A stretch of DNA of 63,453 bases, the filler included, from Octopus bimaculoides (lineage: Eukaryota): assembly GCF_001194135.2 (NCBI RefSeq). It is 6 parts of 5 records of this genome, joined end to end, with 100 filler letters (N's around TTAATTAATTAA, not from the genome) between each part and the next. Parts side by side here need not be neighbours in the genome. Positions count along the whole stretch, not along the records: positions 61,282 to 63,453 come from NC_068989.1; 5 more parts are not named here. One strand, written 5' to 3'. The number at the start of each line of letters is the position of its first letter. The stretch's first letter is position 1. Shown in pieces: positions 52,908 to 63,453 of the stretch. The position numbers were made by a program, and so were the translations under genes. The notes under the pieces were generated by a model. It did not search any database. It saw nothing but the letters and a program-made list of their open reading frames with translations, and was not told where the DNA came from.

Positions 52908-54986
52908 TATCTCTTTATTACCCACTAGGGGCTAAACAAAGAAGGGACAACACAATCTAATTGGGGTCAGATTAAAACATGAGGTTACATAAAATATGAA
53001 ACAATTAAAAATTTGGATATAATGAAATCGGTGAAATCGGAAATCGAATGCTACGACATACAATGTACAAAACAACATAGAAAGATGAAGTGGGGGACTG
53101 GGTTACGCTCCGACTCCACAAGCTCCATCCCACCACTGGCACTTTTGAAGACACTTATGGCATATTCAATTGGAATCTTTCACTCGCAAGTCTCGAGCGA
53201 CATACTTCCATCTTGATTGGAACACTTTCTCCGACAGACATTTCCTCTCCAGTCATATTTTTCTTTTCAAATGAAAAGAAAAATATCTCACCAGGTGATG
53301 GCTGGATATGAAAGTGCCCGTCTTGGCCCCTTTCATTCGAGTCTTCCACACTACCTCTTTCGCTACTGCTATTATAGTGAGGAAACATTTCTTACCTTTG
53401 TTTGATAACAAACTTGGCGGGTCAATTTTTATAATTGACTCAGCTGACAACTGTAATCTTCCTTCACTTGACACTAGGTGTTCCACGTAAACCCACATTT
53501 CAGAGACTCTTGAACACTGTACAATAGCATGCGGGGCGGTTTCCCTATCCCGCCCGCATCTTGGACAGGTCGGTGATGTCTGCATTCCATGTCTTGCAAG
53601 TTTATCGCGAACGGGTAAGGCTCCTCTGTAACATTACCAGGTCAAAGACATTTGGAAATTATCCAACGACTTCAACCTGAATGTACGAAAGAACAGGCTG
53701 TCGAGTTCAATAAATCCGAGACCCAGAGTCGTTCCCAGGCCATCGTCACATTCTGCCTCTACTAACCCTCTATAGAAGAATGCTGTAGAACCCCCGCTGC
53801 CGGCGTTGCCCGAGCGTCGGAATAACAGGAGGGCCTTACAACACTCCGTGTACCATAAACTCAACCTCGGACTGTGATAGCACCAAGCTTCCTTTGCACT
53901 CTACTGGCGAACTTGGGGAACATTTGTCTTGCCAACGGAGACCACAGCTGGTCACCATCCAGGAGTATCCAAAGATGCCTCAACCTCAACGCGTGCCTGC
54001 GCATCATCAACCAAGGCATCCCTAAACCTCCCTTTAACGGTTTCTGGCAACAGATAGAGCGTCTCACAAGTGGCTTTGAGCCCCTCCACAAAAAGTGAAA
54101 GAGCTGTCTTTCCAACTTGGTCAACTATGAATCAGGGCAAGGAACGACGGTCAGGCGATAGGTAATAACCGATGCGATGAACACATTGGCTACCTCCGCC
54201 CTCCCATTCAAGGACAGCCTTCGCCAAGACCAACTCTTGGCTATACCGGCCACCTTGCTCAAAACCTCTGCCCAGTTCTTCTCCACCTGGTGGTCTGGAC
54301 CAAACCAAACTCCCAGCAACTTAACCGGTCCCTCCGTCCAGCATCCTACGACACTATCCGAAGGCATCGACTTGCTCCTCCAGGTGCCGAGTTGCAAGCC
54401 GACTGACTTATCCCGATTAATCTTTGCTCCTGCCACTGTCTCGTAATCCTCAATAACCTCGCCTACTTTACGCAGGCGTGTCATTGTGGTCACGCTGATG
54501 GTGATGTCGTCCGCATACACTGTAACAAACTCCCCCAAGACCGGCGCTCTTGGGATCTCTCTCAGCTTTATCAGCAGCGGCTCAAGAGCCACCATGTACA
54601 AAAGCGGAGAGAGTGGACACCTCTGACGAACCGAACGCTTGATGAAGAACGGCTTAGAAAGAAAACCGTTCACCCGAACTAGCGAGTCGATGTTGTGATA
54701 CAATTGAATAATCCACCTGAGGAAACAGACGCGCAAGCCAAACCTCGCAAGAACACTCACCAGGTACCGATGGCCGACCCTATCGAAAGCGTTAGATGCA
54801 CCAAAGCCCCCCCCCCTCTGCCAGTCTTAGTCCCAAACCTCTCTATGGTATAGCAGATAAGGTGGAGATTATCCTGAATGGTCCTGCCGGGGATGGCACA
54901 GGTCTCTGCCTCCCCAATCAAACCATCCGTGACACACGCCAACCTTTTCGCTAATACCTTGGCCAAAATCTTCACTTCTGTATTTA
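52908..54986 (-). mobile_element. Tx1/L1-clade LINE copy A: RT, CCHC C-terminus and 3' UTR (degenerate)
   Basis: KILAKVLAKRL, IPGRTIQDNLHL, SVRQRCPLSPLLY..ALEPLL, VYADDIT, GAKINRDKS, KPL.GGLGMP and CPRCGRDRETAPHAIVQC, with several frameshifts and stops. Confidence 0.95.
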
Positions 54987-61179: not shown

Positions 61180-61419
61180 TANNNNNNNNNNNNNNNNNNN
61201 NNNNNNNNNNNNNNNNNNNNNNNNNTTAATTAATTAANNNNNNNNNNNNNNNNNNNNNNNNNNNNNNNNNNNNNNNNNNNNGGTATTGACACCAACCCCC
61301 ACGGCTGTAGTAAAAGAGATTTTTCCAAGGTGCCGCGCAGTGGGGCCGAGCCCGAAACCGCATGGTTAGAAAGCGATCTTAACCAGATAACAATGCCTGC
61401 GTCTATTAAAAGCACAATG

Positions 61420-62273
61420 TTATTTCATTCCACTTCAGCATGGCTGTTCCGTAGGAACCGACATAACTACCATTTTTAATCCCAGGAGCAGCCTCCTCCA
61501 GTGGTTATCGATGCAATCTGCACCCGATATATATTGCCAGCAGAGGAGCGAACACCTACCATCTTCCAACGACGACGACCGGACAACCAGACTGTTCGGT
61601 TTCGAGCTATTTGTGCTCATCCTCGGTGGTGGACATCCGTCCGCTAGAAATAGCAGTAGTTCGTTTCAGCTCGCAATAATAAAAACAAATGCGCCCTTTT
61701 AAAGTCTAGCCAGGCTCATGGGCCCGGTTTCCCAGTTTCTATGGCGTATGTGTTCTCCAGCTGGACGGGACGCCAGTCCCTCGCAGCGTTACTCAGTTTT
61801 GCCAGCTGAGTGGACTGGAAGAACGTGAAATGAAGTGTTTTGCTCGAAAACACAACGCGTCACCCGGTCCAGGAATCGAAAGCACGATCTTACGATCATG
61901 ATGCTGACACCCTAACCACTAAGCCACGCGCCTCCACTCAGCTCGCAATACATACAAAAAATAACTGCCAACCAGTCACTGATCTTGCAACAAGCAAAGT
62001 AGCTACTTAGAAAATCTACATAAAGAGATGAAAGTAGTAACTATTACTGAAAGGTAATGTTTACCACAACTTCAACATGGCTGTTCCATAGAAACTGACG
62101 TCACTATCATTTGCTTGTTGCAAGATCGGTGACGGATTGTCACTTACTTTTCTATATATTGCGAGCTGGATGAGGCTTCTCCTGGGTTAAAAATAATAGC
62201 AAAGTCGGTTCCTATCGAACAGCCATGTTGAAGTGGTGATAAACATTACTTCTCAGTATAGTCACTACTTCAT
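61420..62273. mobile_element. Composite TIR element: three copies of a CACTTCA(G/A)CATGGCTGTTC...GAA(A)C(C/T)GAC terminal module, with a nested SINE
   Basis: Modules at about 61437 (+), 62070 (+) and 62180-62240 (-). 62028-62273 forms a MITE with about 65-bp imperfect TIRs. Confidence 0.6.
61695..61935 (-). mobile_element. Young tRNA-headed SINE (family D head, GACTGGCGTCCCGTCCAG box)
   Basis: On the minus strand: GGAGGCGCGTGGCTTAGTGGTTAGGGTGTCAGC...GTTCGATTCCTGGACCGG; CpG-rich. Confidence 0.85.
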
Positions 62274-62442
62274 TTCATACAGATTTTCTAACTAGCTACT
62301 TTGCTTATTATTTCATTCTCCTATTTAACTAATTACTTTTTATTCATAATATATTTCGTATATTATCTAATTCAGTTATTCAATATATTCTCTTATTCCT
62401 TCATTCCACTATGTTTATTACTCTAAAATCTGTTGCATAAAC

Positions 62443-62860
62443 GGCGAGCTGGCAGAAACGTTAGCACGCCGGGCAAAATACTTAGCGGTATTTCGTCTGT
62501 CTTGACATTCTGAGTTCAAATTCCACCGAGGTCGACTTTGCCTTTCATCTTTCGGGGTCGATAAATTAAGTACTAGTTACGCACTGGGGTCGATGTAATC
62601 GACTTAATCCCTTTGTCTGTCCTTGTTTGTCCCCTCTATGTTTAGCCCCTTGTGGGCAATAAAGAAATAAGAAACGTTAGCACGCCGGGCGAAATGGTTA
62701 GCGGTATTTCGGCTGTCTTTATGCTCTGAGTTCAAATTCCGCCGAGATCGACTTTGTCTTTCATCCTTTCGAGGCCGATAAATTAAGTATCAGTTGCGTA
62801 CTGGGGTCGATCTAATCAACTGGCCTCCTCCTCCAAAATTTCGGGTCTTGCTCCTAGAGT
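62443..62860 (+). mobile_element. Two family B SINEs in tandem; the first ends in a Tx1-like tail, the second in the usual tail
   Basis: AGAAACGTTAGCACGCCGGGC starts at both 62454 and 62670. 62627-62669 matches the LINE 3' end at 52908-52950. Confidence 0.9.
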
Positions 62861-63347
62861 AGAAAGGTATAATTTATGTTACATACTGTAGCCCTTTATT
62901 GCATGTTTCATAATAAATTTTTTAAAGTTCTTATTTGTTTAAAGAATGCTATCCATGTCTCTTTTAACACGTCTATTCGATACACCCTCTCTAACCGATC
63001 AGCCATTTGTTTTGTTACTTTTTGCTTTTGCTTTTAACCCTAGGAGTAAAACTCCACTTGCCAGAGGCTCGCATTTGGTTCCATTTCCCATTTAATTCCT
63101 TTACCATGCACATTCATATCTATTTTTCTTCATCATTATCTTCTTCTACATCATCGTCGTCTTCTTCATCCCCCCTTCTTCTCCCTTTTCGTGTTCCTCT
63201 CTAATTGACTCCTCTCTTTCGATCTCTCTCTATCCGTCTCTCTTCTATCTGTTTCTGTTTCTTTCTCACTGATTGTCTCTCTTTCTCTCAGTTTTTTGTG
63301 TGTATCTCTCTCTCCCTTCGTCACTTTCCTCTCTCCTTGCATCCCTT

Positions 63348-63453
63348 CTTCTTCTTCTTCTTCTTCTTCTTCTTCTTCTTCTTCTTCTTCTTCCTCATCT
63401 TCTTCCTCATCTTCTTCTTCTTCTTCTTCTTCTTCTTCTTCTTCTTCCTCATC
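63348..63453. repeat. (CTT)n microsatellite in a pyrimidine-rich tract
   Basis: Direct repeat. Confidence 0.95.

What the first reader, a model, noticed from the sequence alone, without database searches (positions are those of the whole stretch)
62443..62700. SINE carrying a Tx1/L1-type 3' tail, positioned at a precise site inside the head of another copy of the same SINE
Seen: 62627-62669 (TTGTCCCCTCTATGTTTAGCCCCTTGTGGGCAATAAAGAAATA) matches the minus-strand 3' end of the Tx1-like LINE at 52908-52950 (TTGTCCCTTCTTTGTTTAGCCCCTAGTGGGTAATAAAGAGATA) at 38/43 nt, ungapped. The other family B copies that reach their 3' end (9.6, 41.1, 48.6, 62.8 kb) have a different tail. The Tx1-tailed unit is immediately followed by a second copy that begins at nt 12 of the head (GGCGAGCTGGC^AGAAACGTTAGC). 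Established: SINEs borrow 3' tails from their partner LINEs, and many Tx1-clade elements are sequence-specific. Inference: this SINE subfamily has swapped its tail for that of a Tx1 LINE and may insert site-specifically into other SINE heads, i.e. a SINE that parasitises its own family.
Basis: partly seen in the sequence, partly recalled or inferred. Interest (0 to 1): 0.75.

Follow-up and report, generated by a model that had tools for sequence, protein, structure and literature searches.

The report
Octopus SINE joined into another SINE's head
Two copies of an abundant octopus short retrotransposon (SINE) sit head-to-tail, and the same junction (complete tail joined to base 12 of the next copy's head) recurs at many other octopus loci, so these elements appear to land repeatedly in one another's heads and build arrays; the claimed link to a Tx1 LINE could not be checked.

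Summary
A full-length SINE (62443-62669) ends in a 65-nt tail, here called tail A. It is followed without a gap by a second copy that starts at head nt 12 (62670) and carries the family's common tail, here called tail B.

The organism is an octopus. I obtained 76 kb of Octopus bimaculoides chromosome and ten short octopus contigs.
- Tail A is a working 3' end. One full-length tail-A copy lies in unique DNA with a 16-nt target-site duplication (TSD, 15/16 matching).
- The junction tail A|AGAAACGTTAG recurs. Of 17 tail-A ends, 11-12 abut a SINE head at nt 12±1, though the sample is biased toward this junction.
- Arrays read [A][B], [A][A][B] and [A][A][A][A][B].
- Tail-B copies do the same at a lower rate.
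- Units within an array are no closer to each other than to the consensus. Unit ages differ in some arrays.

Best reading (about 0.4): new copies insert into the head of resident copies at nt 11|12, and homology absorbs the target duplication. Rivals are amplification of multimeric SINEs and template switching.

Tails A and B are homologous at their ends and leave the same insertion signature, so a swap to a different LINE clade is not supported. The Tx1 match lies outside my piece and is untested.

The closest precedent is the crocodilian SINEU/Tx1-Mar system, so this would be a new variant of a known kind.

The parts
62443..62453 (+). SINE head nt 1-11 (GGCGAGCTGGC). Ownership is ambiguous: it is either the 5' end of unit 1 or the retained 5' end of the resident copy into which unit 1 inserted. 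In RNA folding it pairs with nt 18-28.
   Evidence: hairpin with loop nt 12-17, AGAAAC; full-length copies elsewhere start (A/T)GGC-GGCGAGCTGGC.
62454..62604 (+). Unit 1, head nt 12 through the body. It carries the A-subfamily diagnostic bases (TACGCAC, GATGTAAT).
   Evidence: D3, D4. alignment; 94.4% identical to the family body consensus.
62605..62669 (+). Tail A (65 nt). It contains AATAAA at 62658-62663 and ends ...GAAATA.
   Evidence: The same tail, 92% identical, ends at the same base next to a 16-nt TSD in O. bimaculoides L005 40605-40669.
62669..62670 (+). Junction: last base of tail A | head nt 12 of the next unit (AAATA|AGAAAC). Nothing is lost and there is no spacer.
   Evidence: The same junction appears in L006 (twice), L007 (twice), L008, L010 and L016.
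62670..62821 (+). Unit 2, head nt 12 through the body, of the B subfamily.
   Evidence: nhmmer against consB, model nt 12-207, 169 bits; 92.9% identical to the body consensus.
62822..62867 (+). Tail B (GGCCTCCTCCTCCAAAATTTCGGGTCTTGCTCCTAGAGTAGAAAGG), the majority tail of the family.
62431..62440 (+). Candidate upstream copy of a TSD flanking the whole two-unit composite (TGTTGCATAA). Weak evidence.
   Evidence: Best partner is TGTTTCATAA at 62904-62913 (9/10). A second candidate, TGTTACATA at 62877-62885, I read by eye. An equal score was reached in 26 of 2000 shuffles and in 7 of 140 real control windows.
62877..62913 (+). Region holding the two candidate downstream TSD copies (62877-62885 and 62904-62913). 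Inconclusive.
   Evidence: for 62904-62913; sequence for 62877-62885.

Best explanation
The locus is a two-unit head-to-tail array of one abundant octopus tRNA-related SINE family.

Proposed mechanism:
1. A tail-B copy was resident at this site.
2. A tail-A copy was later reverse-transcribed into its head. The priming nick lay between head nt 11 and 12, so the complete tail A is joined to AGAAAC.
3. The target duplication created at such a site (head nt 12 to about nt 27) is identical to the newcomer's own head. The 5' junction therefore resolves by annealing and leaves a seamless full head.
4. The result is [nt 1-11][nt 12 to tail A][nt 12 to tail B]. Each insertion regenerates the AGAAAC... 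site, so repeated hits build arrays.

Shown: the junction is recurrent; tail A is a functional 3' end; array units descend independently from near-consensus sources; unit ages differ in some arrays.

Inferred: the order of events at this locus, absorption of the duplication by homology, and whatever directs the nick to nt 11|12.

The partner LINE is probably of the L1/Tx1 kind, judging from the 16-nt TSDs and the AATAAA in tail A. It was not seen.
For: - The junction recurs. Of 17 tail-A ends in 9 non-redundant sources, 11-12 abut a head at nt 12±1 (sequences). About ten diverged ORFs from public assemblies read across the same junction in frame.
- Unbiased sample: 3 of 14 tails in L005 plus the piece abut head nt 8-12.
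- Tail completeness is what reverse transcription primed at the target nick (TPRT) predicts. Tail A always ends at the base defined by the 16-nt TSD of the solo copy L005 40897-40605.
- A B-tailed unit occurs only at the 3' end of arrays: window [A][B], L007 [A][A][B], L016 [A][A][A][A][B]. This fits an older B resident that is hit later by A copies.
- Array units are closer to the consensus than to their neighbours. The arrays therefore did not grow by late local duplication.
- Unit ages differ within L007: 82%, 76% and 58% over the same 76 positions. L015 shows 89% versus 74% against own consensus.
- Solo copies that start at nt 12 are essentially absent among about 11 L005 copies, which are full length.
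- Precedent: SINEs mobilised by target-specific Tx1 LINEs make tandem insertions that sandwich a TSD (Kojima 2015, PMC4494074). B-type triplets with TSD-like spacers occur in L005 66626-65995.
Against: - GGC^AGAAAC does not resemble the nick sites of solo copies, whose TSDs start AATA(A/T)T. An extra targeting factor has to be assumed.
- Ages inside arrays show no consistent direction. They are equal in L016. The downstream unit looks younger in L008 and L010, at about 2 sigma. In the window itself the values are 94.4% versus 92.9%, which is not a significant difference.
- Most junction examples were found with a query that spans the junction, so the 11-12 of 17 figure is inflated.
- No empty site, no LINE copy at the site, and no clear TSD for the composite were seen.
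- The species behind the Logan runs (Logan assemblies of public sequencing runs) is unknown.
Confidence: 0.4

Rival explanations
1. Composite (dimeric or multimeric) SINE. One founding event joined an A unit to a B unit that lacked nt 1-11. The multimer is transcribed from the single intact head and retrotransposed as a whole through its last tail. All loci therefore inherit the same internal junction. Tail A acts as a linker within multimers.
For: - The junction is identical across diverged loci.
- The architecture is always full head first, with a B tail, where present, last.
- Unit ages are equal in L016 and not significantly different in the window.
- Neither tail contains a run of four T, so Pol III could read through (sequence).
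- There are possible TSDs around the whole window composite.
Against: - The number of A units varies from 1 to at least 4.
- Ages are unequal in L007 and L015.
- Other junction types exist: B tail to head nt 8, A tail to head nt 3, A tail to body nt 119.
- Solo tail-A copies with their own TSD exist.
Confidence: 0.25
2. Template switching in a single retrotransposition event. The reverse transcriptase starts on a tail-B SINE RNA at the target and leaves it at nt 12, either because the RNA is truncated or processed there or because the enzyme pauses. It then jumps end-to-end onto the 3' end of a tail-A SINE RNA and copies that to its 5' end.
For: - The acceptor tail is complete and the junction has no spacer.
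- The first unit has a seamless full head.
- The site is not a typical nick motif.
- The downstream unit is truncated at variable positions: nt 3, 8, 12, about 19 and 119. This resembles premature termination.
- nt 12-17 form the loop of a predicted 5' hairpin.
Against: - Solo copies truncated at nt 12 should then be common, but they are not.
- Ages differ inside L007.
- No [B][A] order was seen, although both tails can prime. The search was, however, biased against finding that order.
Confidence: 0.2
3. Chance adjacency: two independent insertions, one of them 5'-truncated, landed next to each other in a SINE-rich genome.
For: SINEs make up about 12% of an octopus genome (PMC13282606). The piece holds four SINE copies in 2 kb.
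Against: The same base-precise junction recurs at many loci. My rough estimate of the random expectation is below 0.1 of 14 tails, against 3 observed.
Confidence: 0.03
4. Local tandem duplication (unequal crossing-over or slippage) of a single SINE, or an assembly artefact.
For: Head-to-tail arrays are what such processes produce. L016 holds one recent exact 18-nt duplication.
Against: - The two window units carry different tails and differ at 12-14% of positions.
- Units are not closer to their array neighbours than to the consensus.
- The junction is seen in independent assemblies, and in several sequencing runs for the same locus.
Confidence: 0.03

Closest known systems
SINEU families and Tx1-Mar LINEs of crocodilians (Kojima 2015, PMC4494074)
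   Same: The SINEs show a shared insertion preference for one site in another abundant transposon. Tandem insertions arise from sequential hits on the same site. The TSD is 16 nt. The system is attributed to target-specific Tx1-clade LINEs.
   Different: There the target is an unrelated Mariner DNA transposon, and tandem copies sandwich a visible TSD. Here the target is the head of the same SINE family, the junction has no spacer, and the LINE partner has not been seen.
Tx1L inserted in Tx1D, and other target-specific Tx1-clade LINEs (Keno, Kibi, Koshi), as summarised in PMC4494074 and PMC3747384
   Same: A retrotransposon uses one site inside another repeated element as its landing site.
   Different: Those are autonomous LINEs with demonstrated or census-based specificity. 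Here only non-autonomous copies were examined, and insertion into unique DNA also occurs.
SINE-LINE pairs with a shared 3' tail (stringent recognition, e.g. UnaSINE1/UnaL2; review PMC3747384)
   Same: The SINE ends in a specific non-poly(A) tail. There are two tail variants on one body, and their extreme 3' ends are conserved.
   Different: The matching LINE 3' end could not be examined here.
Octopus tRNA-derived SINEs OK, OR1 and OR2 (Ohshima and Okada 1994, cited in PMC4824008 and PMC4758252)
   Same: Same host genus, and a tRNA-related, highly abundant SINE.
   Different: Their sequences are not held in any tool I had, so identity with one of them is untested. No report of head-targeted arrays turned up in the papers I searched.
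Dimeric SINEs such as Alu, and L1-mediated chimeric retrocopies made by template switching (from my own knowledge)
   Same: Two RNA-derived units are joined head-to-tail at a fixed point.
   Different: Here the number of units varies, unit ages can differ, and monomers with either tail transpose on their own.

Membership tests
tRNA-derived SINE (SINE2) | Head related to a tRNA, with internal Pol III A and B boxes | tested here: inconclusive
   ARAGORN and Rfam call no tRNA. By eye, the head keeps tRNA-like U8, A14, R15, G18 and A21, a TGGCAGA A-box-like motif, and a B-box-like GAGTTCAAATTCC.
tRNA-derived SINE (SINE2) | Short, non-coding, highly repeated and interspersed, flanked by target-site duplications | tested here: met
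   The units are about 210-230 nt with no long ORF. There are about 26 units in 62 kb of O. bimaculoides. 16-nt TSDs match at 15/16 and 14/16.
tRNA-derived SINE (SINE2) | 3' tail shared with a partner LINE | not testable with these tools
No LINE ORF is present in L005. No cephalopod LINE sequence was obtainable.
Target-specific SINE mobilised by a Tx1-clade LINE (SINEU/Tx1-Mar type) | One kind of sequence flanks more than 20% of copies (criterion in PMC4494074) | tested here: inconclusive
   11-12 of 17 tail-A ends abut head nt 12±1, but six loci were found through that junction. In the unbiased sample the figures are 1 of 2 tail-A ends and 2 of 12 tail-B ends.
Target-specific SINE mobilised by a Tx1-clade LINE (SINEU/Tx1-Mar type) | The partner Tx1 LINE shows the same target preference | not testable with these tools
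   No LINE copy was available.
Target-specific SINE mobilised by a Tx1-clade LINE (SINEU/Tx1-Mar type) | Tandem insertions produced by sequential hits on the same site | tested here: met
   L005 66626-65995 holds three full-length units separated by 23-nt and 8-nt spacers. The spacers repeat the downstream flank AATATAT.CTA.AT.GA, as read by eye from the flanks. Ages are 82%, 83% and 99%. Arrays joined at nt 12 have unequal ages in L007.
Dimeric or composite SINE family | The same internal junction in all copies | tested here: met
Dimeric or composite SINE family | Fixed unit number, and equal age of the units within a copy | tested here: not met
   There are 1 to at least 4 A units per array. 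L007 units are 82%, 76% and 58% identical to consensus. Ages are equal in L016 and the window, so the test fails for some arrays only.
Octopus OK/OR1/OR2 SINEs | Sequence identity with the published consensus | not testable with these tools
   The JMB 1994 paper, SINEBase and Repbase sequences are not held. A full-text search for four sub-strings of the element found nothing relevant.

The most novel reading that the evidence does not exclude
An octopus LINE/SINE pair, possibly Tx1-clade, homes to one position (nt 11|12, the edge of the 5' hairpin loop) in the tRNA-like head of its own SINE family. Each insertion regenerates the target, so the family builds head-to-tail arrays. This would make the family a self-targeting SINE whose landing pads are its own hundreds of thousands of copies, and it could help explain how octopus genomes tolerate about 12% SINE content.
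Probability: 0.3. Interest if true: 0.7.

Novelty: new variant of a known kind. Interest (0 to 1): 0.5.

Why it matters
SINEs are the most expanded repeat class in Octopus genomes. Why they are tolerated and how they spread is an open question.

If copies of this family preferentially land in the heads of older copies, much of the expansion would go into safe sites. It would also inactivate the promoters of internal units. And it would produce arrays that repeat annotators may mis-score as new families or as satellites.

It would extend the known crocodilian case (SINEs riding target-specific Tx1 LINEs into a DNA transposon) to a self-targeting system in a mollusc.

If the arrays instead come from multimer amplification or template jumping, the finding is an ordinary structural variant of a SINE family.

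Tried and rejected
- Scans for the SINE core and for tail A in the viral, metagenome and GTDB contig collections gave either nothing or four chance matches to the tail pattern.
- The word-indexed protein search with the junction peptide found nothing.
- A six-frame concatenate found only one O. bimaculoides gene model with an exonised SINE (P0001). Its locus is not on record. Its homologues include no cephalopods.
- Exact look-ups of window ORFs failed.
- RNA folding of the two tails and of unit 1 gave no significant structure, with z-scores between -1.25 and +1.25. I therefore make no claim of a recognition stem-loop.
- Rfam found no hammerhead ribozyme or tRNA, so I dropped a retrozyme or circular-RNA reading.
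- The TSD search around the window composite was inconclusive. No TSD was found for unit 1 alone.
- No LINE ORFs are present in L005.
- A literature search for the SRR run numbers did not identify the species of the Logan contigs.
- The L016 1181-1240 segment, which I first read as a tail fragment nested in a head, turned out to contain an exact 18-nt duplicate. I left it uninterpreted.
- Slippage between the AGAAA of the tail and the AGAAA of the head is rejected, because both copies of the motif are kept at the junction.

Full report
**Scope.** Only window 61282-63453 holds sequence.

**Checking the observation.**
- The piece carries two same-strand copies of one SINE (families D3/D4).
- Unit 1 runs from GGCGAGCTGGC at 62443 to ...GGGCAATAAAGAAATA at 62669.
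It runs to about 62867.
- Head and body are 86-88% identical between the two units.
- After ...AATCGACT the units diverge. Unit 1 has a 65-nt tail, here tail A (62605-62669, with AATAAA at 62658-62663). Unit 2 has a roughly 46-nt tail, here tail B.
I could not confirm that the second string exists in a LINE.
- ARAGORN and Rfam call nothing in the piece.

**Getting comparison sequence.**
- DNA pattern scans of the viral, metagenome and prokaryote collections found no octopus DNA.
- A six-frame concatenate of the locus hit one Octopus bimaculoides gene model with an exonised copy of this SINE (P0001). This identifies the host as an octopus.
- The full HMMER search of protein representatives was queried with the 61-residue reading frame that crosses the junction (window 62607-62789, minus strand). 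It returned 17 hits.
- About ten of these are short ORFs from public assemblies that read in frame from a SINE head straight into tail A.
- Their loci could be fetched:
  - L005: 76 kb of O. bimaculoides chromosome CM046612.1, of which 62 kb is not N.
  - L006-L014 and L016: Logan contigs (assemblies of public sequencing runs) from runs SRR11869384-94, species unknown.
  - L015: an ENA metagenome scaffold.

**What the family looks like.**
- From L005 I derived a consensus.
- Most copies end in tail B (...CCTTGTGCCTAGAGTAGAAAAG).
- Tail A is rarer, with one copy in the 62 kb of L005.
- That copy (40897-40605, minus strand) is full length and lies in unique DNA. It is flanked by a 16-nt TSD, AATACTATAAGGCCTA / AATAATATAAGGCCTA (15/16). 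Tail A is therefore a working 3' end, and its last base is the A at window 62669.
- A tail-B copy has a 16-nt TSD as well, AATATTCTTCTTATTA / AATATTCCTCTAATTA (14/16).
- Both TSDs start AATA(A/T)T.
- The last ~32 nt of the two tails align ungapped at 19/32 (read).
- Older tail-A copies keep the GGCC..CCCC block of tail B in front of the A-specific segment.
- The two tails are therefore diverged relatives with the same insertion signature. This does not fit a swap to a different LINE clade. It fits related LINE lineages.

**The junction is recurrent.** An nhmmer census with both consensus sequences over nine non-redundant sources gave the following.

| Tail type | Ends counted | Abut head at nt 12±1 | Other SINE position | Spacer then full head | Unique DNA |
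|---|---|---|---|---|---|
| Tail A | 17 | 11-12 | head nt 3 after a 7-nt spacer (L013); head about nt 19 (L010); body nt 119 of a tail-B copy (L015) | - | 2 |
| Tail B | 15 | 2 (at head nt 8-12) | - | 3 (spacers of 8-23 nt) | 10 |

- The tail-A junctions at nt 12±1 are in the window, L006 (twice), L007 (twice), L008, L010 and L016 (three or four times).
- The junction sequences are shown.
- Six of the loci were found through a junction-spanning query, so the tail-A fraction is inflated.
- In the unbiased part (L005 plus the piece, about 64 kb), 3 of 14 complete tails still abut a head at nt 8-12. My rough estimate of the random expectation is below 0.1.
- SINE units are also strongly clustered head-to-tail in L005. 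There are four arrays among about 26 units.

**Architecture of the arrays.**
- Window: [A][B]. L007: [A][A][B]. L016: [A][A][A][A][B]. L010: at least three A units, then a degenerate remnant.
- The first unit has the intact head, and internal units start at nt 12.
- A B-tailed unit, where present, is last.

**How the arrays arose.**
- Pairwise identities are star-like. Each unit is closer to the consensus than to its neighbour in the array. Window units are 87% identical to each other but 95% and 91% identical to the youngest L005 copy. L016 units are 54-60% identical to each other and 68-73% identical to the consensus. The arrays therefore did not grow by late local duplication.
- Ages inside arrays are unequal in L007: 82%, 76% and 58% over the same 76 positions. 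L015 is also unequal.
- Ages are equal in L016.
- In L008 and L010 the downstream unit looks younger, at about 2 sigma.
- In the window the difference is not significant: 94.4 ± 2.0% versus 92.9 ± 2.3%.
- Almost all solo copies in L005 are full length. Copies that begin at nt 12 without a preceding tail are essentially absent.

**Most likely mechanism (inference).**
- A new copy is reverse-transcribed at a nick between head nt 11 and 12 of a resident copy. This explains why the complete tail always meets AGAAAC.
- A TSD of about 16 nt formed there would be head nt 12-27. This is identical to the newcomer's own head, so the upstream junction can form by annealing and leaves no visible duplication.
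- On this reading, the octopus arrays are what the 'tandem insertions sandwiching a TSD' described for SINEU-3 (PMC4494074) would look like when the TSD is part of the element itself.
- L005 also holds ordinary tandem insertions with spacers. In 66626-65995, spacers of 23 and 8 nt repeat the downstream flank, and the last unit is 99% identical to the consensus while the others are at 82-83%.

**Weak points of this reading.**
- GGC^AGAAAC is unlike the AATA(A/T)T sites of solo insertions, so an unknown factor would have to direct the nick. Candidates are a sequence-specific endonuclease, Pol III factors bound to the head, or the predicted hairpin whose loop is nt 12-17.
- The window composite has only weak candidate TSDs.
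- No LINE and no empty site were seen.

**Rivals.**
- Amplification of multimeric SINEs explains the identical junction and the equal ages in L016 and the window. It does not explain the variable unit number, the L007 and L015 ages, or the other junction positions.
- End-to-end template switching explains the spacer-free junction and the variable truncation of the downstream unit. It predicts many solo copies truncated at nt 12, which I did not see.
- Chance adjacency, local duplication and assembly error are disfavoured by the recurrence, by the different tails, and by independent assemblies of the same loci.

**Comparison with known systems.**
- SINEs borrowing LINE tails, and Tx1-clade target specificity, are established (PMC3747384; PMC4494074).
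- L1-Tx1 LINEs are among the recently active families in O. vulgaris, and SINEs make up about 11.6% of that genome (PMC13282606).
- The closest precedent is SINEU/Tx1-Mar.
- What would be new here is that the target is the head of the same SINE family, and that the target is regenerated at each insertion.
- Whether the element is one of the published octopus SINEs (OK, OR1, OR2) could not be tested.

**Verdict.**
- The site-preference idea gains real support from recurrence at other loci. It is not specific to tail A, it is not obligatory, and it is not yet separated from two rivals.
- The Tx1 link is untested, and the 'tail swap' is better described as two diverged versions of one kind of tail.
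- Interest is moderate. If targeting is confirmed, this is a new variant of a known kind.

Noticed in passing
window 61691-61937 (minus strand), with repeats at 61666-61690 and 61938-61962: A different tRNA-like SINE family lies on the minus strand. Its head reads GTGGAGGCGCGTGGCTTAGTGG.... It is flanked by a 25-nt direct repeat (80% identical, TCAGCTCGCAATA...), which is probably its TSD. Copies of this family also occur in L005, for example at 41125-40916.
   Followed up: partly
window 61282-61400: A fragment of a third tRNA-like repeat (minus strand) is cut off by the edge of the piece. It has four matches of 74-78% identity in L005.
   Followed up: partly
window 61957-62310, and 61430-61482: A nested inverted-repeat (foldback-like) structure: arms 62045-62112 / 62191-62258 (68 nt, 84% complementary), plus outer arms 61957-61998 / 62110-62151 and 61989-62024 / 62274-62309. 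A third copy of the inner arm lies at 61430-61482. It has no match in L005. It could be a MITE-like or palindromic repeat.
   Followed up: no
window 63100-63453: A long polypyrimidine tract ends in a (TTC)n microsatellite that runs to the edge of the piece. Similar arrays occur in L005. (TTC)n is the known target of some Tx1-clade LINEs (Koshi), but nothing is inserted here.
   Followed up: no
L005 about 69665-69700: A short interstitial run of telomere-like repeats (TTAGGG about four times) sits between a head fragment of the studied SINE and the head of the second SINE family.
   Followed up: no
L005 37223-37622: Three tail-less units (head and body to about nt 100-140) lie in tandem, each followed directly by the next head at nt 2-6. 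This is a different kind of array from the tail-to-nt-12 type, and may be an older, shorter relative of the family.
   Followed up: no
P0001 (UniProt A0A0L8GQ56) and P0121 (XP_052828027.1), L005 10001-66298: Two O. bimaculoides gene models translate antisense SINE sequence. P0121 is made almost entirely of two adjacent SINE copies. They look like annotation artefacts or exonised repeats.
   Followed up: partly
L015 (ENA ERZ23499442 scaffold_285125): A metagenome assembly contains an octopus SINE locus (a full-length tail-A copy plus a tail-B fragment). This indicates host or dietary octopus DNA in that sample.
   Followed up: no
L016 1181-1240: An exact 18-nt duplicate (TATGGGCAATAAAATGAT) brackets a 24-nt head-like segment inside an otherwise ~70%-identity array. 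It is a recent local duplication at a unit junction and remains unexplained.
   Followed up: partly
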